A stretch of 64,000 nucleotides of DNA, taken from positions 1 through 64,000 of IMG/VR virus record IMGVR_UViG_3300023174_000033; one strand, given 5' to 3'. Within the stretch, counting starts at the first letter, position 1; each line of letters begins with the position of its first letter. The notes beneath the pieces were generated by a model. That model was not told the origin of the DNA and made no database searches. It worked only from the letters and a program-made list of their open reading frames with translations. Of the stretch, positions 7,782-60,070 are shown in pieces. Both the position numbers and the translations under genes were made by a program.

Positions 7782-8279
7782 TTATAGTTTTTCTATTATA
7801 TTAACTAACTTAGCATAATCCTGACTCATCAACCATTTGAGTCCAAAGTGTAAAGGTTGTGGTAAATTATCCAATTCAGTCCAAGTGAATTCCTTAGTTT
7901 CCCAGTTTAATTTAGGTGTAAATTCTTCATCTACTATCGCTAAGAAGTTATAGTATCTAAACGAATCTTTTTGAAATATAGATAGTGGTACCATTTCTAC
8001 CTTACCACTATATCCAGCTTCCTCTGTTAATTCTCTTTTGGCTGAAATTTGTGGATCTTCATCACTATCAATCGCACCCCCCCAAACACCCCAAGTGTTC
8101 GGCTCTAATACATATGATGATCGTAATGGTAAAAGAAATCTTTTTGTTACCCTACATAGGATTATACAACCAGCGCCTTTTTTACCCCAAAATCCAGTAT
8201 CAGATAAAGCCTTACGGTGGTCTTCATCACTTTCCTTCAAAAATTTTTCAAATGATTCAAATTTGAATAAATGTTTCAT
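7782..8279 (-). CDS. NUDIX hydrolase with N-terminal MKHLFKFESF tag
   Basis: Nudix box GGAIDSDEDPQISAKRELTEEAG. Confidence 0.9.
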   Translation of the reverse strand: MKHLFKFESFEKFLKESDEDHRKALSDTGFWGKKGAGCIILCRVTKRFLLPLRSSYVLEPNTWGVWGGAIDSDEDPQISAKRELTEEAGYSGKVEMVPLSIFQKDSFRYYNFLAIVDEEFTPKLNWETKEFTWTELDNLPQPLHFGLKWLMSQDYAKLVNIIEKL

Positions 8280-8944
8280 ATTATATTATTTTCTAAACAC
8301 CATTCATCCAAGACTTTTAAAGCCTCCTCCCTTGGTAAATCTCTTACCACTCTACCATTCTCCTTATAGAACTGTGCCCTCATTTGATTATCTATCCCAC
8401 GCTCAGTGAAATCTTCATCCTTTAGGACTGGTTCAGACTTATATGATCTAGGAATTCTAGGAACTTTAGTAAATAATCCCTCACTAGCTTTATCTTTTAA
8501 TAATTGCTCCAAACCTTTAAATGGGTTTTTATCACTTTCCTCACATATAAAATGTCCCATAGCTTTTGTATAATCAGTAGCCCTTGTATTGGGTGCAAAT
8601 ATAGAAACCACAAAACCAATACCACCTTGATCGAATGGTTTGATTAATATAATGTGATCAGTCTCCTCACATCGACAAATCAAAACCTTTAGAACATCTT
8701 TATCACTATATTCATATTGACGATCAAATTCAGCACTAAATGAAACATCACCTATAATAGATTTACACAACTCTTCTATCTTATTAAAAAATCCGTTTGA
8801 TTTCTTATCATCATCCCAAACGAGATACTTATCCCCCATTAACCAACTCTCCCTCCAAGTATTATATTGTTCCGCACTTATCTCTTCATAATAAGTTGAA
8901 AAGTAATCAGTATCAAAATCTTCAAATAATTTTAAGTGTTTCAT
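8276..8944 (-). CDS. Hypothetical protein, MKHLKLFE family
   Basis: N-terminal tag; C-terminal ~50 aa shared with 17280-17969. Confidence 0.7.
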   Translation of the reverse strand: MKHLKLFEDFDTDYFSTYYEEISAEQYNTWRESWLMGDKYLVWDDDKKSNGFFNKIEELCKSIIGDVSFSAEFDRQYEYSDKDVLKVLICRCEETDHIILIKPFDQGGIGFVVSIFAPNTRATDYTKAMGHFICEESDKNPFKGLEQLLKDKASEGLFTKVPRIPRSYKSEPVLKDEDFTERGIDNQMRAQFYKENGRVVRDLPREEALKVLDEWCLENNII

Positions 8945-17279: not shown

Positions 17280-17969
17280 TTATTTATTATTCATATCCCA
17301 TTTATCCAAAACCTTTAAAGCTTCTTCTCTGGGTAAATCCCCTACCTCCTTACCATGTTCCTTGTAAAACTTAGCCTTCATTTGATTGTCCATTCCACGC
17401 TCGATAAAATGTTCATCCTTTAAGATTGGTTCAGACTTATAAGCTTTTGGTTCCTTTTTAATCTTCTTATGTAAACAAGGCGATTCAGTCCAAACGTGTA
17501 ATGTAACACCTTCTTCCTTAGACATCTGAATCAATTCTTCATAAGACAAGGATCCAACCATACCACTATCAATTAACTGCTGTTGATACTCAACTATTGG
17601 TAGATAATCCCAATTCTTAAAGAAAAGTTGCCCAAGTCCACCACTGCCTATTTGTTTTGTAAACCCAAATCTAGCACCTTCTTGTGGTATTATCTCAAAT
17701 GCATTTCCAAACTTATCATAATTATTATCAGCCGGTCTGAAAAACATATGTACAGATTTAGTAGGGTCTTGTATTCCAAACTTAGTTGACCAGTTAGTCA
17801 TGAATTTTCTATAATTTTCATCATACCACATATCCCCTAAATGAACCTTTCTTTGACTAGGGTCATCTATGTATTCATCCTTATCTGCCCTTGAACCTCT
17901 TATCAAGGTTTTGTTGAATACATCTGGGAAATTAGATTGGAAGTTTTCGAATAGTTTAATATGTTTCAT
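17280..17969 (-). CDS. Hypothetical protein, MKHIKLFE family
   Basis: N-terminal tag; C-terminal module shared with 8276-8944. Confidence 0.7.
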   Translation of the reverse strand: MKHIKLFENFQSNFPDVFNKTLIRGSRADKDEYIDDPSQRKVHLGDMWYDENYRKFMTNWSTKFGIQDPTKSVHMFFRPADNNYDKFGNAFEIIPQEGARFGFTKQIGSGGLGQLFFKNWDYLPIVEYQQQLIDSGMVGSLSYEELIQMSKEEGVTLHVWTESPCLHKKIKKEPKAYKSEPILKDEHFIERGMDNQMKAKFYKEHGKEVGDLPREEALKVLDKWDMNNK

Positions 17970-24184: not shown

Positions 24185-26743
24185 TTAAGGTGGGCAAGTT
24201 CCCCATACTGGTTTTGGTAATGTCCATGCTGCCCCAGGTCCGGAGAATAATGATGGCACTGAAGGTATTAATGAAACACACCAGCCACTCAGATCTCTAT
24301 TGAATGCGCTTGCAAGAAAGAACATATTATCCATGTTTGTTACATTAGACGTATCCCAATTACCTATATTCTGATTGAAAATACTCGCACCCACAAACAT
24401 ACCATACATTGTAGTTACATTTGATGTGGTCCAAGAACCAATATTCTGATTGAAATTGGTTGCACTAGCAAACATATCACTCATACTTGTAACTTGTGAG
24501 GTGTTCCAAGAACTAATGTTACCATTAAATGATGGTGCCTGAGAGAACATTTCACTCATATCTGTAACTTGTGATGTGTTCCAACTATTAAGAGTATTAT
24601 TAAATGCGTTTGCACTATAGAACATACGACTCATGTTTGTAACAGACGAAGTATCCCATCCACTTATGTTTTGGTTGAATACATCAGCACCCTCGAACAT
24701 ACCACTCATATTTGTTACATTTGAAGTAGTCCAACTTCCAATATTTCTGTTGAACGATACTGCATTATTAAACATCCCACTCATATTATTTATGGTTGAT
24801 GTGTTCCAATTTCCGATATTCCCATTGAAACTTGAGGCGTTCCAAAACATGAGACTCAAATCAGTGACCTGACGAAGATTAGGGGCGTCCGTAGCTGAAT
24901 AAGTCATATTAACACAATCAGCAAAAGCCCCGTTAAGAGATCCTTTCCAATGATTGGTTCCCCATTGAACTATGTCAGTAACTTTGACCGCATCCGAGGA
25001 TCCAGCAAATTGTATTGATGGAAATACTTTAGTAATGCTGATACTAAATTTACTTCCAGTTGCAAAATTTATTGTATGATTTCCAGTGAGTCCTCTAACA
25101 GATCCCTTATTGCCTGATGTGATCAAATCCTGCCAAGTTACATTGTATCTGTATGAGTATCCGTATTGGTCGTAAGTCGGTATAGTGAAGTTTGAACCAC
25201 TACCTAGTGCAGTGTCAATATTGAAAATAAATGGACTTTGTGATGCTGAAAAGCCCCAATTTGGTTTTTGTAAGCCCCACGCTGAAGCTCCCGTTTTGAA
25301 ACCATCCGGTTCGGTCAACTTATTAGGAACCGACCATAAACTGAGATCTTGATTGAATGATGAAGCTCCATTGAACATACCATCCATATATGGTCCAGTA
25401 GCACCTTTTGAAACATCCCAGTATCCTATATCTTGATTGAATGAACTTGCACCGGAGAACATACCAAAAAAACTGGTACTTTTTGAAACTGTCCATCCGC
25501 TGATATCTTGATTGAATGATGGTGCATTGGAAAACATGCCAATCATGTTATTGGCTTGAGTTGTGTCCCAATTTGATATATCACCATTGAAAGCAATTGC
25601 TCCCGAGAACATATTTTGAAAGTTAAGGGTATTACTTGCAGTATATAAATTCCAAGTATTCAAATTTTGATTGAATGATTCTGCATTATAGAACATTCGG
25701 AAGAAACTTGAAACTTTTGTGACATTCCAAGCACTTATATCTTGGTTGAATGATATTGCTCCCTCAAACATAGCACTTACAGAAAAAACATTAGATACTG
25801 TCCAAGTTCCGATAGGCTGGTCAAATATAGAACATTCTTGGAACATATTGGCCAAAGTTACAGCACTTGTTAGATTCCAGTTACTGATATTTTGATTAAA
25901 CGATGAGCAACCATAGAACATTCCAGAAAATGTGTTAACATTACCAACATCCCAAGAACTCAAAGGTTGATCGAACGAGCTACATAAATAGAACATAAGT
26001 CCCATATTTTGTACAGAAGATACATTCCAAGAATTCAAAGGTTGATCAAACGAGCTACACAAATAGAACATTGATTGCATGGATGCAACATTTGAAACAA
26101 TCCAGCTAGAAATATCTTGATTAAACGGTATACATCCATAGAACATTTGTTCCATTAACGTTACACTTGAAACGTCCCAAGTTGTCACATCACCATTGAA
26201 TAAACTACATCCAGAAAACATACTAGTCATATCAGTGATCGTACTTGTGTCCCAACCACTCAAATCTGGATTTGTTATAGAACTACAATTTAAAAACGCT
26301 TCCACCATGCTAGTAACATTGGATAAATTTGGGTAATCTATAGCTGTAATTGTCATATTCAAACAACCAGAAAATGCACTGTTAAAACTTTCCCATACTA
26401 TATTGCCCCAATTTTCTATTCTAGTTAATTTTAGACAACTACCAGTATTTGCAAATTTTACAGATGGGTAGGTACCCGTAATTTTTATTCTCCATATACC
26501 TGGATTTGGTAAAATAAAATTAAGTCCACTATTTTGATTTGTATATAAACCATTATTTGATGGATTCCCAACCTCCTCATAGTATAGGTCAAAAAGATAT
26601 GTTAGTGTGTTATCATAAGGAATATCCAAACTTGGATTACCATCTCCCAAACTAGTATCAAATCGCATTACGAATTCTGGTCCAACATAAGGAGGTTCCT
26701 CTGAGGGACTAGAATCTATAATGCCGTGTAATAGTGAAATCAT
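24185..26743 (-). CDS. BspA/DUF285-repeat surface or fibre protein (two repeat blocks)
   Basis: Many ~25-aa FNQDISxWDVSxVTxMxxMF repeats. Confidence 0.92.
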   Translation of the reverse strand: MISLLHGIIDSSPSEEPPYVGPEFVMRFDTSLGDGNPSLDIPYDNTLTYLFDLYYEEVGNPSNNGLYTNQNSGLNFILPNPGIWRIKITGTYPSVKFANTGSCLKLTRIENWGNIVWESFNSAFSGCLNMTITAIDYPNLSNVTSMVEAFLNCSSITNPDLSGWDTSTITDMTSMFSGCSLFNGDVTTWDVSSVTLMEQMFYGCIPFNQDISSWIVSNVASMQSMFYLCSSFDQPLNSWNVSSVQNMGLMFYLCSSFDQPLSSWDVGNVNTFSGMFYGCSSFNQNISNWNLTSAVTLANMFQECSIFDQPIGTWTVSNVFSVSAMFEGAISFNQDISAWNVTKVSSFFRMFYNAESFNQNLNTWNLYTASNTLNFQNMFSGAIAFNGDISNWDTTQANNMIGMFSNAPSFNQDISGWTVSKSTSFFGMFSGASSFNQDIGYWDVSKGATGPYMDGMFNGASSFNQDLSLWSVPNKLTEPDGFKTGASAWGLQKPNWGFSASQSPFIFNIDTALGSGSNFTIPTYDQYGYSYRYNVTWQDLITSGNKGSVRGLTGNHTINFATGSKFSISITKVFPSIQFAGSSDAVKVTDIVQWGTNHWKGSLNGAFADCVNMTYSATDAPNLRQVTDLSLMFWNASSFNGNIGNWNTSTINNMSGMFNNAVSFNRNIGSWTTSNVTNMSGMFEGADVFNQNISGWDTSSVTNMSRMFYSANAFNNTLNSWNTSQVTDMSEMFSQAPSFNGNISSWNTSQVTSMSDMFASATNFNQNIGSWTTSNVTTMYGMFVGASIFNQNIGNWDTSNVTNMDNMFFLASAFNRDLSGWCVSLIPSVPSLFSGPGAAWTLPKPVWGTCPP

Positions 26744-30740: not shown

Positions 30741-31310
30741 TTAAATCTTCTTGTAATCTTTAATTGACTGCTCACTAAATATAGCAACATTCTCACTACC
30801 CCTTTCAATAACTATAAACCCATCATATCCTCTTTCCTTTATTGATTCAATTATAGGACCCGACTCAATAACCCTCCAAGCACCATTCTTAATCCTCCAT
30901 AGATAAAAGTAAACAGCTTCTGATTTACCATTAATCTCAAACTCCTCATTTGTATCAGGATTATAACCTTTTAATTTTGATGAAAACTCCAAGAAGGTTG
31001 TACCATTTACTGGATCTATATACTTCTCATCAATCATCTTTTGTATAGTTCCCTTTAAGTCTAAATCAATAATCACCTTCCTATCCATAGGATTACATAA
31101 CTTTAAACCTTCTTTTAACTCAACCTCCCATACAGCACCATCAGGAAACTCATCACCATCATTCATTCCAGCAAAGTCTTTAGCAAAATCTAAATTAGTA
31201 GTTAAGAAAATAGCCCCAGAAAACCTTTTCTTCTCTGGTGGGAAATCTCCTTTTCTATTCCCATGGTATAACTTCTTTCCAAATGATTCAAATAACTTTA
31301 AGTATTTCAT
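30741..31310 (-). CDS. Putative ADP-ribosyltransferase-fold protein with MKYLKLFESF tag
   Basis: LYHG, IFLT…A..FA, GYDG and E.VAIF pattern. Confidence 0.6.
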   Translation of the reverse strand: MKYLKLFESFGKKLYHGNRKGDFPPEKKRFSGAIFLTTNLDFAKDFAGMNDGDEFPDGAVWEVELKEGLKLCNPMDRKVIIDLDLKGTIQKMIDEKYIDPVNGTTFLEFSSKLKGYNPDTNEEFEINGKSEAVYFYLWRIKNGAWRVIESGPIIESIKERGYDGFIVIERGSENVAIFSEQSIKDYKKI

Positions 31311-36050: not shown

Positions 36051-36635
36051 ATGTCAAACAACAGCCAAACATTATCTGAACTCTTTAATGAATCATTTTA
36101 TCTACCAGTTTATAAGAGGTGGAGAGTTGATAAGGAAAAAGCAGGTAAAGATATCGTAGGTGAAGAGTATGAGAAATTCAGAAAGAATTACTATACACAA
36201 AAAGGTTTAAAAGCCCTTAAAGGTAAAAGAGTCTTTGGTGATATGAATCCTGACCTGGTTGTATATAAAGGTGATGAAATTGTTATTGTTGAAGAATGTA
36301 AGGGACATTACGTTGATAAATGTTTCCTTGAAAGAGCTATAGGTGATGCTGTTAAAATCTTCAGATGGTGTTTAGAGAATAAAAAATCAATGCCTTATTT
36401 TGTTTTGAGTTGTGCTACTAATCTAAAGACTTTCAACCCAATCTTCAATCATATCGTTGATAACTATAGGAAAGATTTATCCGATATCCTTAAAGAGAAG
36501 TTTGTTTACCTACCACTATGTGACCACGGCAGATTACCTAAAAATAGTTATTTCACTAACCCAGATAATAACTTTAAAATTGATCAAAACCTTGTAGATA
36601 AACAAGAAGAGATTATCTCAAATATTACAAAGTAA
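36051..36635 (+). CDS. Putative PD-(D/E)xK nuclease (restriction-endonuclease-like)
   Basis: NPDLVV…VEECKG motif; converges on a methyltransferase gene. Confidence 0.55.
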   Translation: MSNNSQTLSELFNESFYLPVYKRWRVDKEKAGKDIVGEEYEKFRKNYYTQKGLKALKGKRVFGDMNPDLVVYKGDEIVIVEECKGHYVDKCFLERAIGDAVKIFRWCLENKKSMPYFVLSCATNLKTFNPIFNHIVDNYRKDLSDILKEKFVYLPLCDHGRLPKNSYFTNPDNNFKIDQNLVDKQEEIISNITK

Positions 36636-37680
36636 TATAATCAAAACTCTCTCCAATTGACAAAACCTTTTTAATTCTTGGTTTTGTTATTGATTCACAT
36701 ATATTTGATTCGTTATTCGTAACCAGAATAAACTTACGGTTTGATTCTGGATTTTCTCTATTGTATTCCAATACAGCCTGACCTAAAGTACCACTACCAG
36801 CAAAAAAATCCAATATAACCGAATCATTCCTAGATGCAATCTCTATAATCCGTTTAATTAGTTTAACTGGTTTAGGATAAAGGAAACTAGCTTCAACCTT
36901 TAGAATATCTTCTAAATCCTTTGTACCATCTTGAGTATATCCAACATCTTGACCTAACCAAAGGTTTCTAATACCCCTTCCTTTAGAATTCCCTAGAAAA
37001 GTTTTCTTGGTAGGACAAGAATCACCTTTCTCACCCCAATAGATTAGGTTTTCCTTAACTAATGTGTTATACCATTCTTCTTCAGAGTAATTCCAACCTT
37101 TAGTCCACTTAACACCAGTGGGAGATTCAACTGTATAAACCTTCTTGGTTTTCTTTTTAAATAACTGAACTCCTTTCCTCCAAGGCCCCCTAGGATCATT
37201 ATCCCAATTCTTATATACTTTAGCGTATTCAGGATCTAATGGATCATTATTGATAATTACTTTCTTTGGATTCTTACAGTAAACCAAAATTGATTCTGTT
37301 TGACTAGATATACCTTGTTTATCATTTGATACGGTGTATTTACATTGCCAAACTATAGTGGATAAATGATTCTTTATATCAAAAATAGTATCACAAAGAA
37401 TCCTCAAATAAGGAGCATTCTTATCATTTATATTGATGAATATAAGTCCATCCTCGGTAAGCAATTCTTTGGATAATTCAAGTCTTGGTTTCAAGAAGTC
37501 TAACCAAGATTGCATACCATTAAATGAGTCTTTATACTTACCCATTTTTTTACCAGTGTTATAAGGGGGATCTATACTGATTAACTGTATCTTTCCCTTT
37601 AATTCCTCTCTGAATTTATTTAGAAAATCTAAATTATCAGAATTGAATAAATAATTCCTATTCAAATTAATCATACTCAT
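36625..37680 (-). CDS. Adenine DNA methyltransferase (Mod-like, beta class)
   Basis: IDPPYNTG, YPKP..L..RII and LDFFAGSGT motifs; start at 37680 follows a minus-strand TATATTTG. Confidence 0.93.
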   Translation of the reverse strand: MSMINLNRNYLFNSDNLDFLNKFREELKGKIQLISIDPPYNTGKKMGKYKDSFNGMQSWLDFLKPRLELSKELLTEDGLIFININDKNAPYLRILCDTIFDIKNHLSTIVWQCKYTVSNDKQGISSQTESILVYCKNPKKVIINNDPLDPEYAKVYKNWDNDPRGPWRKGVQLFKKKTKKVYTVESPTGVKWTKGWNYSEEEWYNTLVKENLIYWGEKGDSCPTKKTFLGNSKGRGIRNLWLGQDVGYTQDGTKDLEDILKVEASFLYPKPVKLIKRIIEIASRNDSVILDFFAGSGTLGQAVLEYNRENPESNRKFILVTNNESNICESITKPRIKKVLSIGESFDYITL

Positions 37681-37762
37681 TATATCACAAATATAAGCTA
37701 ATGTCTGGTTTTTTACAAAATATATTTTAAAATCCATAAAATATCATTATCTTTGTATTCAT

Positions 37763-39172: not shown

Positions 39173-39385
39173 TTAAAGATTCTCGGATGCTTGTCTGGCT
39201 TCTTCTAATGTAGAGAAACACTGCCACTCACTATTATTTTCAAAACGAGTTCTAGCACATTCATCAAGTGGCCCACCAATTGCCCAAGTTTCTGTTTCTT
39301 GAATTGTTAATTGTCCACATATAAACTTTTTTTCTTTTACTTTTTGGTAAACCTCACCACTCGCTAATACATATATCTTTGCCAT
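39173..39385 (-). CDS. Hypothetical protein
   Basis: ORF. Confidence 0.55.
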   Translation of the reverse strand: MAKIYVLASGEVYQKVKEKKFICGQLTIQETETWAIGGPLDECARTRFENNSEWQCFSTLEEARQASENL

Positions 39386-39447
39386 TTTAGAATCTATATT
39401 TAAATCTATATATTATTTGGTGAAAATTAATATATAGATCTATCCAT

Positions 39448-39819
39448 ATGAAATACCTAAAAATATTTGAAAGTTTTACAAGTGATAAATTTGAAGATCA
39501 AATTGAAGATTTATTTATTGGAATAACTGATGAATTAGGATCAGATATAGGTATTCATGTGGTTATGGATCTATTTGATGTTGGTCCAAGAACTGAACGA
39601 CTACAAGTAAAGATATTCTTTCCACATGGATATGAACCATCACCTATGGATGTTTATTATAAAATAAGAAATGAACTGGTACCAATCCATAACAAAATAA
39701 TGAAAGATTATGGATTAAAGTTCAGTGGTTGTTCACAATTATATAGACGTGGTGACCCTAAATACTATGGGGTGATGAATTTAATTTATTATAAGAATGA
39801 AGTATCTGAAGAAGTTTGA
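39448..39819 (+). CDS. MKYLKIFESF-family protein
   Basis: N-terminal tag; IEDLF motif shared with the next ORF. Confidence 0.7.
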   Translation: MKYLKIFESFTSDKFEDQIEDLFIGITDELGSDIGIHVVMDLFDVGPRTERLQVKIFFPHGYEPSPMDVYYKIRNELVPIHNKIMKDYGLKFSGCSQLYRRGDPKYYGVMNLIYYKNEVSEEV

Positions 39820-40654
39820 GGGGTTTGACTATCATGGTCCACAATATGCAAAGACTATTTGTGATGGTTGGGGTATTGATTTAGAAGACATAGAAGACCT
39901 TTTTCTTGAATTTGCAGATGAAGGTAAAGTTCTTATTCATCCTATGATAGTAAATAAGGAGTTACGGGTTACTATCCATTCTATTTGGAAAGATTTAAAT
40001 GATTCTGATTGGTTATATAATCCTCTTTGGGATGGGAGGTTTGGGTCTATTAAAAGAAGGTTGAGACAAATGGGTCTTGATATGAACTTAGAGACTAAAA
40101 ACTTACCACAAAGATTTGTTAGTGTTAGGATTTTTCCACAAACTGAGAGAAAAAGAACCTACACTAAAACTGATATAGTTACAGAATCATTTGGTAGATT
40201 TCAATTGGATGAAATCAGCAAACAAGAATATTATTCGATTTTGGATAATAATCCTTTGGTTTATATGCCAGAGAGTAAGGTTTTAGAATTTAAAAGTAAG
40301 CTATCAAAAGAATATAAATTACTTTATGCTCGTGGTGATAAAAAAGATACTGTGGAATACTTCCGAGCTGAATATGAAACAGAAATAGATTATCATTTTA
40401 CCTGCAAAAATTTTAGTATAAAAAAGAAATCCCAAGGTCAAGGTGTGGATGAATCTTGTTATATAATGTTCTACAATTACGAAGAGTTTACATCACACGC
40501 AGCTCCCAAATCTCATATTGAAACACTACCCGACCAACAACGAATAAGTTTTCAAAAGAAATTTTACTTTAGATTTGAAGAATCTGACTTCAATCAAATG
40601 TGTAAAAACCCACAAATCCTTTTGGATTACTTAAATAATTTAGACTTATCATGA
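39797..40654 (+). CDS. MKYLKKFE-family two-module protein
   Basis: Internal ESFGRFQLDEI module shared with 41568-43229. Confidence 0.7.
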   Translation: MKYLKKFEGFDYHGPQYAKTICDGWGIDLEDIEDLFLEFADEGKVLIHPMIVNKELRVTIHSIWKDLNDSDWLYNPLWDGRFGSIKRRLRQMGLDMNLETKNLPQRFVSVRIFPQTERKRTYTKTDIVTESFGRFQLDEISKQEYYSILDNNPLVYMPESKVLEFKSKLSKEYKLLYARGDKKDTVEYFRAEYETEIDYHFTCKNFSIKKKSQGQGVDESCYIMFYNYEEFTSHAAPKSHIETLPDQQRISFQKKFYFRFEESDFNQMCKNPQILLDYLNNLDLS

Positions 40655-41097
40655 AACATTTAAAACTATTTGAATCATTTGGTGGTGAACCTTACTTTAG
40701 AATTGAGGTTGCTGAATTCAATCAAGATGATAAGTGTGAATTATTTAATACTAATGAAGTTTCAAAGATTATAGAATTACTAAAAGGATTTGGATATGAA
40801 GTAGAACTAGAAAATATCTTCTATAATCCAACAGAAAACCCAAATAAATCATTTAGGATTAGAGGTAAAAAAACATCACCTTTAGCTAAAGGTGATGGAT
40901 ATTATAAAGATGAAGTTATTCTGTATAAAGTGGAAGATGAATACTTTGATGTGTTTGTAAAGAAGATTACCGGAATACCAGAACAATCAAGATTAGAAAG
41001 ATTGAGAGGTCATAAAGCTATACCACTAACAGATATGGATTATTTAAGGGCAGACCAGTTAGATGGGTTAGAAGAATTATTTAAGGATAGATTATAA
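40651..41097 (+). CDS. MKHLKLFESF-family protein
   Basis: EDEYF…ADQLDGL module. Confidence 0.7.
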   Translation: MKHLKLFESFGGEPYFRIEVAEFNQDDKCELFNTNEVSKIIELLKGFGYEVELENIFYNPTENPNKSFRIRGKKTSPLAKGDGYYKDEVILYKVEDEYFDVFVKKITGIPEQSRLERLRGHKAIPLTDMDYLRADQLDGLEELFKDRL

Positions 41098-41100
41098 GGT

Positions 41101-41553
41101 TTACTTTTTTACATTATCCTTCTCAACCTTTTCAACTATTTCATTTGAAAACTTCTCAAAGTTCTTAATAATACCCATTAAATCTTGAAGTTCCATTCTG
41201 ATGTGAATACTAGTTAATTGCATATCAGTTCCTATAACATTGTAATCAACTAAACACAATACATAAGGCGTGTCATCTTGGACCCCTCTAATAAGAAATG
41301 TTGCAATAAAAATAACCCTTCCAATTTTAGTTTGTTTATTCCAATTCAAAATTATTTGAGTAGGATGCTCACCACCTATTTGATTGGTTCTCATTCCATT
41401 ACGATTTGCATTCAATGCAAAAGCTTGATAAATCTTTCCACTAAAACCAACTCTTTGAGTATTCTTATAAGACTGATCAAACTTCCATTTTGGAACAAAC
41501 TCAAGTTCAAAATCCCCAGTTTCAAATTCCTCAAATACTTTTAAGTATAACAT
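41101..41553 (-). CDS. MLYLKVFEEF-family protein
   Basis: N-terminal tag; GVQDDTPY motif resembles the GDEPF motif of neighbours. Confidence 0.65.
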   Translation of the reverse strand: MLYLKVFEEFETGDFELEFVPKWKFDQSYKNTQRVGFSGKIYQAFALNANRNGMRTNQIGGEHPTQIILNWNKQTKIGRVIFIATFLIRGVQDDTPYVLCLVDYNVIGTDMQLTSIHIRMELQDLMGIIKNFEKFSNEIVEKVEKDNVKK

Positions 41554-41567
41554 ATTAATATATATTA

Positions 41568-43229
41568 ATGATGAAATACCTTAAACTATTTGAATTATTT
41601 GGTGGATTTCAATTGGATGAAATCACAAGAAAACAATACATTGATATCCAGGTCAGTAGAGAGGATGAGATTATTAATTATGGAAGTCTTCAGTTGATGG
41701 GGGAAAACTTGGATAAAAAGTATGAACTAAAACATACTGGTGTTTGGTTTAAGATTGAATGGGTAGATATACTAAACGGTAATGTTGAGATTCAAACAGA
41801 AATATTTGTGGATAAAGTTTCTCAATATGGAGATGAACCATTTTATACTTTAAAATATTACTATGATGTTTCTCAAGGTAGTAAATATAGTGATAGGTAC
41901 CATTTCTTTAGATTTGAGGAATCTGATTTTGACCAGATGTGTAAGAACCCACAAATACTAATTGATTATCTTAAAGATAATTATTTTGATGAGTCTATTA
42001 TTCAAAGGGATGGGGTAGTTGATGAGGCATTTGGTTTCTCTAGGGGGATTAATCCAGATATACTAACACGGGAACAATTTGAAAGTTTATCAAGACAATG
42101 TATTCATATGAGGTTTAGTAGTAAAACCACAGTAGGACTTACTATGAATATTAGAAAGACTGATATAAATATCAACTATGATTCAAAGGTAAAACAACAT
42201 ATAATGTTTTATTTTAATTATAGTTATTTGGATGCTAAAATGGTATTCAATACCAAGTTTTCTATTATGAAGATTGAAGGTGATGAGCCTTTTGTTTATT
42301 TTGATGCTCGATATGGTTATAGAAATATTGGAACGGATTATTGGGAATACCAAAAATATCCACATGATGAGAGCATCTATGGTAGAATGGAGGTAGAGGA
42401 GTTTGATATGATTATCAAAAATCCAAGACTATGGAAAGATTGGATGGTTGATAAAACTTTTGAACTAGACCAACAGACACATAAGATATTAAAAGAATCT
42501 TTATTTGATGTACCAGAACCAGAACTCATGGATGTAAATGAATGGGATGAAGAAGTAACTAATGCTAAAGAAGTTGATTTCAATCAAAAGGAAAAAGAAT
42601 TATTCATTTCTTTGAGTGATACCATCAGTGTAAAAAACAAAAGGTATATGCCAGAAATCGGTAAATCTAGTTTATTTTTTCAGATGATTAATGGGGATAT
42701 AAATCCTAAATTAAAAGAAACAACTCCTATAAGAAATATTTCAACTTACAAAAATGATGATGAATTTTATTATGTAAATATTTGGGGAAGAGATGCTGAT
42801 GATAAGGTATATCGTTGTGATGGTTATGAATGTTGGGAAAAGTTTTTAAAAGAAATATTCCAAGGATATAGAGATTTGATTAATAACCAAACTAAAACCA
42901 ATGAATCATTTGGTGGGTATTATTATAAGGAAATGGGAGGTTCTGATTATTTCAGGGCAACAAATCATAGATTCACTGATAGTGAGATAAAAGAGTTATC
43001 TAATATCGCAGAACAAAAAGGTGGTGAAGTTCAAAAGTATCCAGGTGATTTAATGGCTACTATTAAAATTCCAAGGGATAAAGGAACTGTAACGATGATA
43101 GAACATACTAGTGTAAAGAAAGTAGAGGATGAGTTTTATTATGTGGCATTTGATATAATGAATCAAAAGAAATATTATGAAGCAGATCAGTTTGATGGGT
43201 TAATAAAATTACTAGAAGATATACTATGA
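41568..43229 (+). CDS. Four-module MKYLKLFE-family protein
   Basis: Modules begin at ELFGG, EAFG, ESLFD and ESFGG; three have close paralogs in neighbouring genes. Confidence 0.75.
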   Translation: MMKYLKLFELFGGFQLDEITRKQYIDIQVSREDEIINYGSLQLMGENLDKKYELKHTGVWFKIEWVDILNGNVEIQTEIFVDKVSQYGDEPFYTLKYYYDVSQGSKYSDRYHFFRFEESDFDQMCKNPQILIDYLKDNYFDESIIQRDGVVDEAFGFSRGINPDILTREQFESLSRQCIHMRFSSKTTVGLTMNIRKTDININYDSKVKQHIMFYFNYSYLDAKMVFNTKFSIMKIEGDEPFVYFDARYGYRNIGTDYWEYQKYPHDESIYGRMEVEEFDMIIKNPRLWKDWMVDKTFELDQQTHKILKESLFDVPEPELMDVNEWDEEVTNAKEVDFNQKEKELFISLSDTISVKNKRYMPEIGKSSLFFQMINGDINPKLKETTPIRNISTYKNDDEFYYVNIWGRDADDKVYRCDGYECWEKFLKEIFQGYRDLINNQTKTNESFGGYYYKEMGGSDYFRATNHRFTDSEIKELSNIAEQKGGEVQKYPGDLMATIKIPRDKGTVTMIEHTSVKKVEDEFYYVAFDIMNQKKYYEADQFDGLIKLLEDIL

Positions 43230-43603
43230 AACATTTAAAACTGTTTGAATCATTTTTTGGTGAATATGAGAAGGTTGATGCTGAAACTTGGAATTCATTT
43301 GGAAAGATTACTCGTTTTGGAGATTCTAAAATTAATCAAATAGAAAAACTAATCCATACCAAAGGTTATGGACATATGTTTATTACAGATAAAATAGGAA
43401 CAATTGGGGTTAGTAAGGAATTAATCAATTTTGTTAAAAGGGATAATAAATTATTCACCAAAATCTTAGTAGTATCTCTAGAAGATGAATGGTTTAAAGT
43501 TAGAATAGAAACAAGTAAGAAAACTCAAGTAACATATGATAAACAATATTACATATGTGATCAGTTTGATGGGTTAATAAAATTTATAGAAGAAGTCTTA
43601 TGA
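43226..43603 (+). CDS. MKHLKLFESF-family protein
   Basis: EDEWF…CDQFDGLIK module. Confidence 0.7.
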   Translation: MKHLKLFESFFGEYEKVDAETWNSFGKITRFGDSKINQIEKLIHTKGYGHMFITDKIGTIGVSKELINFVKRDNKLFTKILVVSLEDEWFKVRIETSKKTQVTYDKQYYICDQFDGLIKFIEEVL

Positions 43604-44022
43604 AATACTTAAAACTATTTGAATCTATGTTTGATGAAGTGCCAGAACCAAGAAGTCTTCTTGATGAAAATGGAGATTATATCATAGGTTCATCAAGACT
43701 CCATCAAAATTTAGTTGAACCGTTCAATCAGCAAGAAAAGGTATTCATCAATGAACTTTTAGAAACCTTAAATGAAGATTATATTTCAACTAACTTTAGT
43801 GATCCAGCTCAATTCATATTAGCAATGGGTGAGATGGGTGAACCTACACACTTTTTAAAAGTTATAAAAATGGAGGATGATTATTATCAGGTTGAGTATG
43901 TGAACTATGTAGATTCAGATGATGAGTATATAGTTTCAGAATGTGATGGGTTTGAGTGTTTATCTAAACTTCTAATTGAACTCTTTGGGAAAATTAAAAC
44001 GGATTACGATGGTGGTGAATGA
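43600..44022 (+). CDS. MKYLKLFES-family protein
   Basis: FDEVPEP…FNQ.EK…CDGFEC module, as in module 3 of 41568-43229. Confidence 0.7.
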   Translation: MKYLKLFESMFDEVPEPRSLLDENGDYIIGSSRLHQNLVEPFNQQEKVFINELLETLNEDYISTNFSDPAQFILAMGEMGEPTHFLKVIKMEDDYYQVEYVNYVDSDDEYIVSECDGFECLSKLLIELFGKIKTDYDGGE

Positions 44023-45301: not shown

Positions 45302-46096
45302 ATGAAAACACGAGTAGCTCCATCACCTACGGGTCAATTCCATCTAGGCACCTTACGTACCGCACTTCTTAATTATCTAATGGCCAAGTCCAATGGTGGT
45401 GAGTTTATACTTCGTATTGATGATACCGATCAAGAAAGAAATAAACAAGAGTATATTGATTATATCTATGATCAAATGAAGGAATTTGGTCTAGATTTTG
45501 ACTTAACATTCAAACAGTCTGAAAGATTGGATCGTTATGCAGATGTGTCTCAAAAGATTGGAACACCCACCGAAAATGGATACGAACTTGATATGGGTGA
45601 TTATAAGATGGTTATTCTTAGAAATAATGGATATCCAACTTATAACTTCTGTTCTATTCTAGATGATTATGATTATGATATTACTCATATCGTCCGTGGA
45701 GTAGATCATATTGCTAACCTAGATAAACAAAAAAGAATCTGGGATGAAATCTGTAAAGTTGAAGGTGATAAACCATTTCCAGAAGTTATTCACGCTGGAT
45801 TGCTTTTCGAAGGTGGTAAGAAACTATCAAAAAGAAGTGGCAATGGAACAACACAAGACTACAAAGATGTTAATAAAAAAGCCCTTTTGAATTGGTTGCT
45901 TAAATTTGGATGGTCACACCCAGATCCTAACTTTGATAGTAAACATAAAACTCTGAGTATGGGGGAAATGATCCAACTTTTCAATGATGGTAATATCTCC
46001 AATCGAAATTGTGGAATTGATAAGAATAAACTTGCCTTCTTAAATAAAACTTGGAATAAAAAAGACTCCATAAAGGATAGACAATTTGTTTATTAA
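45302..46096 (+). CDS. Minimal glutamyl-tRNA synthetase / GluQ-like class I synthetase
   Basis: TRVAPSPTG.FHLG, LRIDDTD, QSER, PTYNF…DD, THIVRG.DH and KLSKR motifs; only 264 aa. Confidence 0.9.
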   Translation: MKTRVAPSPTGQFHLGTLRTALLNYLMAKSNGGEFILRIDDTDQERNKQEYIDYIYDQMKEFGLDFDLTFKQSERLDRYADVSQKIGTPTENGYELDMGDYKMVILRNNGYPTYNFCSILDDYDYDITHIVRGVDHIANLDKQKRIWDEICKVEGDKPFPEVIHAGLLFEGGKKLSKRSGNGTTQDYKDVNKKALLNWLLKFGWSHPDPNFDSKHKTLSMGEMIQLFNDGNISNRNCGIDKNKLAFLNKTWNKKDSIKDRQFVY

Positions 46097-58900: not shown

Positions 58901-60070
58901 TCAATTTTTTGATAGAAAATTATCAACCTCAATCCTTCTTATTTCCCTACCTAAATCACCTTTTTTAAAACCCTTTCTAATCAAATCTTGCACATTCGTC
59001 ACTGGCATCCAATTAGAAAACTTTACTATATTTTTACTTTTTAAAATATTTCCCCATTCTAAAATTGTAGAATTATCAATCTTTGATTGTAGTTTTTCTT
59101 TATAATAATCATAAACTAAATTTAAATCAAATTTTGATATTTTTAAGAGAAATACAACCTTTTTAGCAATTTCAATTTCAATCTTATATACTTGAACCAT
59201 TTTATTTTCAAGGTCAAATGGATTCTCAAATAAAAACAAATTTGATAGAATTAAAACAAAATTATCACTATTGATAAGTTTTGTATTTATTTTTGAATTT
59301 GGGAATAATTCTACCCACATATCATATTCTGTGATTAGACTTAAAAAGAAATTAAAATCTTCAGATTGTTTCCAAGCTTTAGTAAATTCACTCCAAATCC
59401 TTTCTTGGGATATTCTTTTCTCTTTATTTGTATCTAAATCAATTGTTGTTAATTTGTTTTTATTTTTGATTGCTTGTTTGGTAGACTCGTCTAATTCCGA
59501 TTTATATCTTGAAGCAAATCTAAAAGCTCTTAATATTCTCAAGGAATCTTCATCAAATCTCTCTGATGCGTTTCCAACCATCTTTATTATGTTTTTATTC
59601 AAATCTTCTTTACCTCCGGTTAAATCTACAATTTCTTTTGTATCTAAATCGTAGAATAAAGCATTGAATGTTATGTCTCTTCTTTTTACATCATCTTCAA
59701 TTGTCACTCCCAATTTAACTTGTGGGTTTCTACCCTTTGAAATATCTTGTCTGAATGTGGTTATTTCAATTCCATCTGGTTGATCATCGGTATATACAAC
59801 TATAGTTCCATAAGCTTTTCCTTGTATATTAGTATTGTATCTATCTTGTAAAAAACTTAATACTTCATCAGGCAGGGCGTTTGTGGTTAAATCAAAATCT
59901 TTTGGATCATCTCCTTTAAGGAAATCTCTAACAGCACCACCGACTATATAAAGTTTTTTACCTTGTTGATTGAATATTTTATGTATATCTTTTATAGATT
60001 TTGGTATAATTGACCATAGATCCATTTGACTTGATTCAACCAAGAAGTTTTTAAAATTTAAAATACGCAT
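58901..60070 (-). CDS. cca: CCA-adding tRNA nucleotidyltransferase (class II)
   Basis: VGGAVRD, DFDLTT, EITTFR, D..RRD.TFNA, RFDEDSLRILRAFRF and SQERI..E motifs. Confidence 0.9.
   Translation of the reverse strand: MRILNFKNFLVESSQMDLWSIIPKSIKDIHKIFNQQGKKLYIVGGAVRDFLKGDDPKDFDLTTNALPDEVLSFLQDRYNTNIQGKAYGTIVVYTDDQPDGIEITTFRQDISKGRNPQVKLGVTIEDDVKRRDITFNALFYDLDTKEIVDLTGGKEDLNKNIIKMVGNASERFDEDSLRILRAFRFASRYKSELDESTKQAIKNKNKLTTIDLDTNKEKRISQERIWSEFTKAWKQSEDFNFFLSLITEYDMWVELFPNSKINTKLINSDNFVLILSNLFLFENPFDLENKMVQVYKIEIEIAKKVVFLLKISKFDLNLVYDYYKEKLQSKIDNSTILEWGNILKSKNIVKFSNWMPVTNVQDLIRKGFKKGDLGREIRRIEVDNFLSKN

What the first reader, a model, noticed from the sequence alone, without database searches (positions are those of the whole stretch)
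39448..44022. Expanded modular family with polyprotein-like fusions joined at E(S/A)F linkers
Seven tagged genes reuse a few modules. FQLDEI…FRFEESDFxQMCKNPQILxDYL occurs in 39797 and 41568. FD(E)VPEP…CDGxEC occurs in 41568 and 43600. EDExF/Y…DQxDGL occurs in 40651, 41568 and 43226. In fused genes each internal module begins at TESFG, DEAFG, KESLF or NESFG, matching the end of the N-terminal tag. Inference: a Glu-specific head protease could release the modules, so one tag would package several effectors.
Basis: partly seen in the sequence, partly recalled or inferred. Interest (0 to 1): 0.6.

Follow-up and report, generated by a model that had tools for sequence, protein, structure and literature searches.

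The report
Tagged capsid-cargo polyproteins of a huge phage
A 465-kb uncultured freshwater phage carries a cluster of small-protein genes that all start with the same 8-residue tag, and some of them are strung together into "beads-on-a-string" proteins whose joints keep an invariant Glu-Ser, so the phage's T4-type head protease most likely cuts them into separate capsid-packaged proteins, although no cleavage has been measured.

Summary
Seven genes at 39448-44022 start with MK(Y/H)LKxFE. They reuse modules A/B, C/D and E (BLASTP E 1e-5 to 2e-10). The four internal joints (VTE|SFG, VDE|AFG, LKE|SLF, TNE|SFG) repeat the end of the tag.

Context: the window is the start of a 464.6-kb virus record with a T4-type portal, major capsid protein and prohead protease. 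Its portal is 81% identical to a 642-kb uncultured phage.

Evidence for cleavage at the joints:
- 45 metagenomic homologues shuffle the same modules. All 119 joints (84 unique) have Glu at P1, with Ser in 76 of 84 at P1'.
- The motif never occurs inside a module.
- AlphaFold2 gives four folded domains. They are separated by pLDDT<50 linkers centred on the joint Glu residues.
- Close relatives carry the same modules either fused or as separate tagged genes, with the Glu at the same aligned position.
- The protease-scaffold protein holds about ten [LI]AE|N repeats and INE|S and IQE|S sites.

Best reading: a T4 capsid-targeting-sequence analogue, with polyproteins cut by the head protease. Cleavage, packaging and module function remain unproven. 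I rate it a new variant of a known kind. Interest 0.62.

The parts
39429..39436 (+). AATATATA promoter-like motif 11 nt upstream of the first gene of the plus-strand cluster
   Evidence: The same motif lies within 40 nt upstream of 116 ORFs, including the major capsid protein and giant structural ORFs.
39448..39819 (+). Tagged single-module gene (module E, 123 aa). The tag is MKYLKIFE|SF, with Glu8 at 39469-39471.
   Evidence: Its orthologue is fused in frame to the next gene in relative L012.
39797..40654 (+). Tagged two-module gene (E2 39824-40180, A2 40196-40651). The joint is IVTE|SFG with the Glu codon at 40184-40186. It overlaps the previous gene by 23 nt in another frame.
40651..41097 (+). 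Tagged single-module gene (D-type, 148 aa), tag MKHLKLFE|SFGG
   Evidence: HMM E 5e-33.
41101..41553 (-). Divergently transcribed tagged gene (MLYLKVFE|EFE, 150 aa), weakly B-like
   Evidence: 23% identity over 129 aa to module B; weak.
41555..41568 (.). Palindrome TTAATATATATTAA between the two divergent start codons; a candidate bidirectional late promoter
41571..43229 (+). Four-module polyprotein-like gene: tag (Glu8 at 41592-41594), A 41601-41990, B 42009-42470, C 42489-42875, D 42894-43226. Joint Glu codons are 42024-42026 (VVDE|AFG), 42495-42497 (ILKE|SLF) and 42903-42905 (KTNE|SFG). There is an extra candidate site, YFDE|SII, at 41991-41993.
   Evidence: (four folded domains with disordered joints).
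43226..43603 (+). Tagged single-module gene (D-type, 125 aa)
   Evidence: model pLDDT 82, pTM 0.77.
43600..44022 (+). Tagged single-module gene (C-type, 140 aa). Its orthologue is the last, fused module of the 709- and 726-aa proteins of relatives.
   Evidence: 72-75% identity to the terminal C of L012 and L014.
30741..31310 (-). Tagged ADP-ribosyltransferase-like protein (ART-PolyVal-like) elsewhere in the window. It is a functional parallel to T4 Alt.
   Evidence: PF18760, E 0.0016, below the cut-off; Atlas feature score 0.94, 187 shared features.
8276..8944 (-). Tagged gene (222 aa) that shares a 64%-identical 66-aa C-terminal domain with the tagged gene at 17280-17969
17280..17969 (-). Tagged gene (229 aa), partner of the gene at 8276-8944

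Best explanation
The locus is a hypervariable cargo cassette of a huge T4-related phage. Each gene starts with an 8-residue N-terminal tag, MK(Y/H)LKxFE. I read the tag as the counterpart of the T4 capsid targeting sequence: it brings the protein into the scaffolding core of the prohead, and the gp21-type prohead protease then cuts it off after its Glu (P3 Leu/Ile, P1 Glu).

Small indels, and recombination between homologous modules, fuse neighbouring genes into strings of 2 to 5 acidic domains of 110-155 aa. At each fusion point the targeting half of the former tag decays. The cleavage half (aliphatic or beta-branched P3, x, Glu | Ser, hydrophobic, Phe/Gly) is kept. The protease would therefore cut the string inside the prohead into the same mature modules that separate tagged genes would give. 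One tag would then load several modules in equal amounts.

- **Shown:** the modules, the joints, their conservation, the disordered linkers, the fused/split polymorphism, the T4-type head genes, and co-occurrence of the tag with a promoter-like motif shared with structural genes.
- **Inferred:** packaging, cleavage, and injection into the host.
- **Unknown:** what the modules do. Anti-defence or host take-over roles are the guess, by analogy with T4 IPI and Alt.
For: 1. **T4-type head module.** Portal PF07230 E 7e-59, major capsid protein PF07068 E 6e-27, head maturation protease phrog_207 E 1e-29.
2. **Published specificity.** T4 gp21 cuts after L/I-x-E. A 10-residue N-terminal CTS suffices for packaging and is then removed. 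CTS-bearing proteins are hypervariable among T4 relatives (PMC9026906, PMC3012670). SPN3US gp245 prefers Ser at P1' (PMC10052503).
3. **The tag fits the L-x-E rule.** It is conserved as a peptide with synonymous codon variation. It occurs 21 times here and 16 times in the 642-kb relative LR756502.1, with 0 for the reversed control. That relative shares none of the modules.
4. **Joint conservation.** All 119 joints in 45 homologues have Glu. Among 84 unique joints, P1 is E in 84, P1' is S in 76, A in 4, P in 3 and T in 1, and P3 is T, I, L or V in 82. The motif never occurs inside a module. It precedes three unrelated module superfamilies.
5. **Structure.** AlphaFold2 gives four folded domains separated by pLDDT<50 segments centred on the joint Glu residues.
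6. **Natural fusion and fission.**
   - In L012 the orthologues of 39448 and 39797 are one ORF with the joint KQFE|GFEY, where the window has MKYLKKFE|GFDY.
   - The orthologue of 43600 is fused behind KTNE|S in L012 and L014.
   - L018 (C, D and D2 100% identical) has B-C-D with its own tag MKHLKLFE|TF where the window has VVDE|AF.
   - A contig variant duplicates C with the joint landing exactly on the Glu309 codon.
7. **Sites in the protease-scaffold protein.** It contains SINE|S, about ten 14-aa repeats each with [LI]AE|N, and KINE|S, LIQE|S and QLNE|S. The capsid protein N-terminus has SINE|N.
8. **Co-regulation.** 15 of 26 tagged genes, or their operon leaders, carry the AATATATA motif, which also precedes the capsid protein and giant structural ORFs.
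9. **Alt parallel.** One tagged protein is ART-like, as T4 Alt is.
Against: - No proteomic or biochemical evidence of cleavage or packaging exists; the phage is uncultured.
- P3 at the commonest joint (KTNE|S) is Thr, not the Leu/Ile of T4.
- The strongest conservation apart from Glu lies on the P' side (Ser, hydrophobic, Phe/Gly), which T4 gp21 is not known to read.
- The bare motif is not enriched proteome-wide.
- The capsid protein cleavage site could not be aligned to T4 gp23.
- The protease match to Pfam S77 is below its cut-off (19.1 against 27 bits).
- The modules are acidic (pI 4.3-5.3), unlike the basic T4 internal proteins.
- The homologues are related by descent, so 119 joints represent only about 12 independent joint classes.
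Confidence: 0.55

Rival explanations
1. The fusions stay intact as multidomain proteins. Under this reading the E-S-(F/L)-(F/G) stretch is kept because it is a functional N-terminal element of every module, for example a contact with the scaffold core or a folding cap, or simply because it is a conserved flexible linker. Only the N-terminal tag, if anything, is removed.
For: - Conservation is strong on the P' side, which belongs to the following module.
- Phe at P2' and P3' could pack on the domain.
- T4 packages CTS fusions to large foreign proteins without internal cleavage (PMC9026906).
- No cleavage data exist.
Against: - The same motif precedes three module superfamilies with no detectable homology. 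It lies in pLDDT<50 segments, not in the folded cores.
- P1 is Glu 84 times out of 84, with no Asp, in otherwise variable acidic linkers. T4 work shows that Asp at P1 blocks processing but not targeting (PMC9026906), so the Glu/Asp asymmetry is what a cleavage constraint predicts.
- Fused and split states alternate among relatives that are 72-100% identical.
Confidence: 0.22
2. The tag is not a capsid-targeting signal. It could serve another purpose, such as efficient initiation on near-leaderless late mRNAs, localisation in the infected cell, or recognition by another protease. The joints would then be cut, if at all, by a different enzyme, for example a host protease or the M20-like peptidase encoded beside the head genes.
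For: - The promoter-like motif often sits only 4-8 nt before the ATG, so the first codons could matter for translation.
- A second peptidase gene lies next to the head module.
- Targeting was not tested, and the complex prediction gave no verdict.
Against: - Synonymous codons vary freely within the tag while the peptide is kept.
- Tags also occur on genes inside operons that start by ATGA overlap without a promoter.
- The joints have no start codon.
- The second peptidase resembles PepT/M20 exopeptidases, not an endoprotease.
- The tag ends in the L-x-E rule of the protease family that the genome encodes.
Confidence: 0.13
3. The long ORFs are artefacts: assembly chimeras of repeated modules, or decaying pseudogene fusions without function.
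For: Repeated modules invite misassembly. Contigs from other lakes show joints and duplications between modules.
Against: - 45 distinct open multi-module ORFs of 300-744 aa come from independent JGI, ENA, NCBI and Logan assemblies, some on contigs of 30-45 kb.
- An independent study holds 95% of the words of this stretch with 0 differences.
- Reading frames are intact and the domains fold confidently.
Confidence: 0.03

Closest known systems
T4 internal proteins IPI, IPII, IPIII and Alt with their capsid targeting sequence (CTS), processed by prohead protease gp21
   Same: - A short conserved N-terminal peptide ends in an aliphatic-x-Glu site.
- The tag sits on otherwise unrelated, hypervariable small proteins, including an ADP-ribosyltransferase.
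- A T4-type portal, protease and capsid protein are encoded in the genome.
- The cargo set differs between close relatives while the tag is kept.
   Different: - The tag sequence differs (MKYLKLFE, 8 residues) and there is no sequence homology to the T4 internal proteins.
- The cargo is acidic, not basic.
- About 26-49 tagged genes occur instead of a handful.
- Cargo modules are also fused into strings with conserved internal Glu-Ser joints, which is not described for the T4 internal proteins.
Processed head, inner-body and ejection proteins of phiKZ, 201phi2-1 and SPN3US (proteases gp175, gp268 and gp245)
   Same: - Giant phages with diverged gp21-like proteases that cut after x-x-Glu, with Ser preferred at P1' in SPN3US.
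- Paralogous families of internal proteins.
- Several cuts per substrate.
   Different: In those phages the cuts remove and fragment long N-terminal propeptides (P3 is Ala, Ser or Gly). They are not described as releasing several folded cargo domains from one chain. There is no short shared N-terminal tag, and no homology to these modules.
Polyvalent proteins of phages and conjugative elements (Iyer et al. 2017, PMC5512222)
   Same: The concept is shared: several conflict-related domains are joined in one polypeptide, delivered with the DNA, and possibly released by proteolysis. An ART-PolyVal-like domain occurs on one tagged protein of this phage.
   Different: - Polyvalent proteins are large, carry known enzymatic domains, and often carry their own embedded peptidase (zincin-like MPTase).
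- Here the domains are small and unknown, with no embedded peptidase (no Pfam hit).
- Release would be in trans by the head protease at a uniform linker motif.
Polyproteins of eukaryotic RNA viruses
   Same: One translation product would be cut at short conserved sites between folded domains by a viral protease.
   Different: The proteases and domains are unrelated. Here fused and unfused gene versions coexist, and the purpose would be co-packaging into a capsid rather than genome economy.

Membership tests
T4-type CTS-bearing internal (capsid-packaged, ejected) proteins | Short conserved N-terminal peptide shared by otherwise unrelated proteins and ending in L/I-x-E | tested here: met
   MK[YH]LKxFE is found on 21 genes by exact DNA pattern (control 0) and on about 26 by a strict regular expression. 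P3 is L, I, V, T or K and P1 is E.
T4-type CTS-bearing internal (capsid-packaged, ejected) proteins | Genome encodes a gp21-family prohead protease and a T4-type head module | tested here: met
   phrog_207 E 1e-29, with Pfam S77 E 1e-3 (below its cut-off). Portal PF07230 E 7e-59 and Gp23 PF07068 E 6e-27, adjacent to each other.
T4-type CTS-bearing internal (capsid-packaged, ejected) proteins | Sequence homology of tag or cargo to T4 IPI, IPII, IPIII or Alt | tested here: not met
   There are no Pfam or PHROG hits for the seven proteins and no tblastn hit in 50,697 phage records. Only one tagged protein is ART-like. The resemblance is functional and architectural, not homology.
T4-type CTS-bearing internal (capsid-packaged, ejected) proteins | Presence in the mature capsid with the tag removed, and ejection into the host | not testable with these tools
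   The phage is uncultured and no virion proteome is available.
Peptidase S77 (T4 gp21) prohead protease, for the 690-aa ORF at G000 247865-249937(-) | Profile match over the catalytic domain, with His and Ser motifs | tested here: inconclusive
   The PHROG 'head maturation protease' match is strong (1e-29), but Pfam S77 scores 19.1 bits against a cut-off of 27. GEFDHP and VSSRA stretches are present and resemble the T4 catalytic motifs as I recall them; they were not aligned here. There was no PDB sequence hit.
Peptidase S77 (T4 gp21) prohead protease, for the 690-aa ORF at G000 247865-249937(-) | Substrates (scaffold, capsid protein) carry aliphatic-x-Glu sites | tested here: met
   About ten [LI]AE|N sites lie in a 14-aa tandem repeat of the fused scaffold part. 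SINE|S follows the protease domain, and SINE|N lies in the capsid protein N-terminus. Actual cleavage was not tested.
Polyvalent proteins (Iyer et al. 2017) | Large multidomain protein built from the known polyvalent domain repertoire, often with an embedded peptidase | tested here: not met
   No Pfam, NCBIfam or PADLOC-type domain was recognised in the 552-aa protein, and there is no embedded peptidase. Only the concept is shared.
phiKZ/SPN3US-type processed head proteins | Long N-terminal propeptides removed at (A/S/G)-x-E; homology to the conserved giant-phage head proteins | tested here: not met
   The tag is 8 residues long, P3 is aliphatic or Thr and never Ala/Ser/Gly, and no homologues were found in the phage collection.

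The most novel reading that the evidence does not exclude
A clade of huge freshwater phages uses a universal 8-residue address tag on up to about 9% of its genes to load cargo into the capsid. It has also evolved cargo polyproteins: strings of 2 to 5 interchangeable acidic modules joined by a minimal, strictly conserved prohead-protease site. One tag would then deliver a stoichiometric cocktail of injected proteins, and modules could be added, lost or duplicated by recombination at the joints without losing packaging. This would be the first polyprotein strategy for capsid cargo in a tailed phage.
Probability: 0.45. Interest if true: 0.75.

Novelty: new variant of a known kind. Interest (0 to 1): 0.62.

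Why it matters
- Injected capsid proteins are a phage's first weapons in the cell, and they are known in detail only for T4, P1, P22, N4 and phiKZ-like phages.
- Huge uncultured phages have large capsids and hundreds of unknown genes. A readable address tag plus cleavage rule would allow the packaged and injected proteome of such phages to be predicted from sequence alone. Here that is about 26-49 genes.
- The polyprotein joints give a precise, falsifiable prediction: the N-termini should start at Ser after eight named Glu codons.
- The fused/split polymorphism shows how new cargo combinations evolve.
- A short tag plus a minimal linker that releases several proteins inside a capsid would also be useful for phage-based protein delivery, as the T4 CTS already is.

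Tried and rejected
- **Phage collection.** DNA and protein searches of the 50,697-record phage collection with the locus found nothing. One viral-contig scan gave a single weak locus (not used).
- **Domain libraries.** Pfam, PHROGs and NCBIfam gave no significant family for any of the seven proteins.
- **Fold searches, whole protein.** The four-domain model gave only meaningless sliding-clamp and other repeat-architecture hits, with TM about 0.1.
- **Fold searches, D module.** The single D-module model (pLDDT 82) had no PDB match at E<=0.001. It gave only weak matches to uncharacterised phage proteins in BFVD and the Atlas. Module function therefore stays open.
- **Alignment to solved T4 structures.** phmmer of the capsid protein and of the protease domain against PDB sequences did not reach T4 gp23 or gp21. 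The capsid protein cleavage site and the catalytic residues are therefore not formally aligned.
- **Complex prediction.** The protease domain (residues 1-180) with the tagged D protein gave no verdict (score 0.01). This is no evidence either way.
- **Second peptidase.** I considered the peptidase beside the head genes (phrog_4191) as the processing enzyme. It resembles PepT/M20 exopeptidases, so I rejected it as the endoprotease.
- **Nucleotide-level signal.** I considered that tag conservation acts at the DNA or RNA level. I rejected this because synonymous positions vary.
- **Frameshifting.** I considered programmed frameshifting at the 23-nt overlap of 39448 and 39797. There is no evidence for it; the fused relative differs by a 1-nt length change plus substitutions.

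Full report
**1. What the window is**

The window is the first 64 kb of a single 464,605-bp virus record with 32% G+C and a CheckV completeness of 98%. The genome has a T4-type head module in one block: portal (PF07230, E 7e-59), a 690-aa head maturation protease (phrog_207, E 1e-29; Pfam Peptidase_S77 only 19 bits) and a Gp23-type major capsid protein (PF07068, E 6e-27).

By portal protein, the nearest sequenced relatives are uncultured huge phages: LR756502.1 (642 kb, 81.5% identity) and LR745206.1 (635 kb). Lak phages follow at 31%. The locus occurs in freshwater and lake metagenomes from about ten studies.

**2. The observation**

The seven ORFs and their tags are as described. BLASTP against all ORFs of the genome confirms the module reuse:

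| Module | Match | E-value |
|---|---|---|
| A | 39797[130-281] vs 41568[9-137] | 1.8e-10 |
| C | 43600[6-129] vs 41568[308-431] | 5e-5 |
| D | 43226[5-125] vs 41568[443-553] | 1e-5 |
| D | 40651 vs 43226 | 1.7e-5 |

Profile comparison adds three points:
- The second module of 41568 (B) is a diverged A (87% probability).
- C and D are homologous (95%).
- E, the module of 39448, is unrelated to the other superfamilies. E2, the first module of 39797, shares only a short IEDLF stretch with E (pairwise BLASTP E 0.028).

All modules are acidic, with median pI 4.3-5.3.

The architectures are therefore E | E2-A2 | D | (x, minus strand) | A-B-C-D | D | C. The four joints are IVTE|SFG, VVDE|AFG, ILKE|SLF and KTNE|SFG, at Glu codons 40184, 42024, 42495 and 42903.

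**3. The tag is a genome-wide feature**

- A degenerate DNA pattern for MK[YH][LI]KxFE matches 21 times in this genome and 16 times in LR756502.1. It matches 0 times in the 735-kb LR756501.1 and 0 times for the reversed control.
- Synonymous positions vary (AAA/AAG, TAC/TAT, TTA/CTA/CTT/CTG, GAA/GAG), so the peptide is what is conserved.
- A strict regular expression finds about 26 tagged ORFs, and a loose one finds 49 of 523.
- Tagged proteins include an ART-PolyVal-like protein, a weak HAD-like one and an NFACT-R domain protein next to the head genes.
- The module HMM finds 12 full C/D modules in this genome but only tag-length matches in LR756502.1. The tag is conserved while the cargo is not, which is the pattern known for T4 internal proteins (PMC3012670, PMC9026906).

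**4. Relatives show bead-on-a-string shuffling with an invariant joint**

The word-based protein search with the 553-aa protein returned 45 metagenomic homologues of 300-744 aa. Nearly all start with the tag.

Mapping the modules gives many architectures: A-B-C-C-D, A-B-C-C-C, B-C-D, B-C-C-C-C, A-C-C-D, C-C-D, E-A-E-C-C, E-A-C-C and others.

All 119 joints contain Glu followed by a small residue. Among 84 unique joint strings:
- P1 is Glu in 84.
- P1' is Ser in 76, Ala in 4, Pro in 3 and Thr in 1.
- P3 is Thr in 51, Ile in 16, Leu in 9, Val in 6 and Gln in 2.
- P2' is hydrophobic.
- P3' is Phe or Gly.

Positions further upstream are variable, with entropy near 3 bits. The motif E[SA][FLMYI][FG] occurs 127 times in the family, always at a tag or a joint and never inside a module.

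The joints fall into about 12 classes: KTNE|S, VIKE|S, ILKE|S, IIQE|S, PINE|S, MIKE|S, KQFE|S/G, IVTE|S, IIKE|S, VDE|A, IDE|T and I[LTS]E|P. The sample is therefore smaller than 119 but still far from chance. No joint has Asp, although the linkers are acidic. In T4, Asp at P1 of the CTS blocks processing but not targeting (PMC9026906).

**5. Domain boundaries**

AlphaFold2 was run on the 552-aa protein with a 34-row alignment, giving mean pLDDT 75. It yields four domains with block pLDDT mostly 74-89. They share a similar strand, helices, antiparallel-sheet and C-terminal-helix order.

The domains are separated by pLDDT<50 segments at 1-12, 144-158, 305-312 and 441-450. Glu8, Glu152, Glu309 and Glu445 lie inside these segments.

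**6. Natural fusion and fission**

- **L012.** In this contig the E, E2 and A2 modules are 72-89% identical and the A and B modules 91-95% identical to the window's. The orthologues of 39448 and 39797 form one 399-aa ORF. The window has ...YYKNEVSEEV-stop overlapping MKYLKKFE|GFDYHGPQ, whereas L012 reads ...YYKYEDQKQFE|GFEYHGPQ. The DNA differs by one base in length plus substitutions.
- **L012 and L014.** The orthologue of the stand-alone C gene 43600 (72-75% identical) is the last bead of 709- and 726-aa proteins, behind KTNE|S(I/M)F.
- **L018.** Here C, D and the downstream D gene are 100% identical to the window. B-C-D is a separate gene with its own tag, MKHLKLFE|TFNFSDGINPD, where the window has VVDE|AFGFSRGINPD.
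- **Stand-alone D homologues** (24 clusters) all carry the tag. In the alignment, the fused D module lines up QTKTNESFGG with MKHLKLFESFGG.
- **Contigs from other lakes**. One is a C/C2 recombinant (joint 42524 to 43620). Another is a C duplication whose inserted letters encode DLISKGNKTN and whose return point is the Glu309 codon.

Cutting after Glu would give the same mature proteins from fused and split versions. That would explain why both are tolerated.

**7. The protease and its other likely substrates**

The 690-aa ORF has GEFDHP and VSSRA stretches. These resemble the T4 gp21 catalytic motifs as I recall them from memory; they were not aligned here.

Downstream it contains:
- SINE|SLNY after the protease domain;
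- a 42-nt (14-aa) tandem array with about ten copies of SEY[LI]AE|NLDKNI.Y;
- an acidic stretch;
- KINE|S, LIQE|S and QLNE|S.

The capsid protein N-terminus has SINE|NAYANATIAGMG. These sites fit the L/I-x-E rule of T4 gp21 (PMC9026906) and closely resemble the joint classes PINE|S and IIQE|S. SPN3US gp245 likewise prefers Ser at P1' (PMC10052503).

**8. Co-regulation**

An AATATATA motif occurs 162 times in the genome, and 116 of those lie within 40 nt upstream of an ORF. These ORFs include the capsid protein and ORFs of 1,000-3,500 aa. Fifteen of 26 tagged genes have it, and most of the rest sit downstream in tagged operons. This suggests late, structural-gene timing, but the promoter is inferred.

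**9. What remains open**

- Module function is unknown.
- Cleavage and packaging are inferred.
- The complex prediction gave no verdict.
- P3 Thr and the strong P'-side conservation differ from T4 and may reflect a diverged specificity or a second constraint.

**10. Verdict**

| Question | Verdict |
|---|---|
| Observation | Confirmed and extended |
| Best description | A T4-CTS-like cargo system of a huge phage, in which cargo modules are also encoded as polyproteins with conserved prohead-protease joints |
| Novelty | New variant of a known kind |
| Confidence in the full mechanism | 0.55 |
| Interest | 0.62 |

Noticed in passing
G000 whole genome; in the window for example 39429-39436 and 41557-41564: An AATATATA motif behaves like a late promoter. 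It has 162 copies, of which 116 lie within 40 nt upstream of ORF starts. There are two spacing classes, 4-8 nt (near-leaderless) and 19-26 nt. It precedes the major capsid protein and ORFs of 1,000-3,500 aa.
   Followed up: partly
window 41555-41568: The palindrome TTAATATATATTAA fills the 14-17 nt between two divergent tagged genes (41553 minus strand, 41568/41571 plus strand). It may be a bidirectional promoter giving leaderless transcripts on both strands.
   Followed up: no
G000 247865-249937(-) = L002 9866-11938(-): The prohead protease is fused to a scaffold-like part. That part has a 14-aa (42-nt) tandem repeat, SEY[LI]AENLDKNI.Y, in about ten copies, each with a T4-type [LI]AE site. 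An extremely acidic stretch follows.
   Followed up: partly
G000 239915-241288(-) = L002 1916-3289(-): A 457-aa PepT/M20-like peptidase (phrog_4191 E 1e-67; weak NCBIfam and PDB PepT hits) lies beside the head module and has the promoter-like motif. It might degrade released tag and scaffold peptides, but this is speculative.
   Followed up: partly
window 30741-31310(-): A tagged 189-aa protein resembles ART-PolyVal ADP-ribosyltransferases (Pfam E 0.0016, below the cut-off; Atlas feature score 0.94). It is a parallel to T4 Alt.
   Followed up: partly
window 8276-8944(-) and 17280-17969(-): Two tagged proteins share a 64%-identical 66-aa C-terminal domain behind unrelated N-terminal parts. This is another case of module exchange among tagged genes.
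   Followed up: no
G000 410192-413898(-) and 434672-435917(+) (L003, L004): There are two further clusters of tagged C/D-type single-module genes, with five and three genes, joined by ATGA-type overlaps. The 276-aa gene at 411022 has Asp instead of Glu at tag position 8 (MKYLESFD).
   Followed up: partly
window 39797-39819: There is a 23-nt out-of-frame overlap between 39448 and 39797. The tag of the second gene is encoded inside the last codons of the first. The overlap is conserved in relative L014 and replaced by an in-frame fusion in L012.
   Followed up: yes
window 45302-46096(+), 58901-60070(-), 24185-26743(-), 36625-37737(-): Several other genes were noted: a short (264 aa) class I Glu/Gln tRNA-synthetase catalytic domain without an anticodon-binding part; a PolyA_pol/CCA-adding-type nucleotidyltransferase; an 852-aa protein with eight DUF285 repeats; and an N6/N4 DNA methylase.
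   Followed up: no
window 39327-40438 and 42124-43625: Contigs of a freshwater metatranscriptome library (X14) cover parts of the locus at 85-100% likeness. This is compatible with expression, but DNA carry-over cannot be excluded.
   Followed up: no
P0013, P0039 (homologues): Some homologues carry a double signal at the N-terminus, MKHIKLYE|SFNKIINE|S(F/L)..., as if a whole module had been deleted between the tag and the next joint.
   Followed up: no
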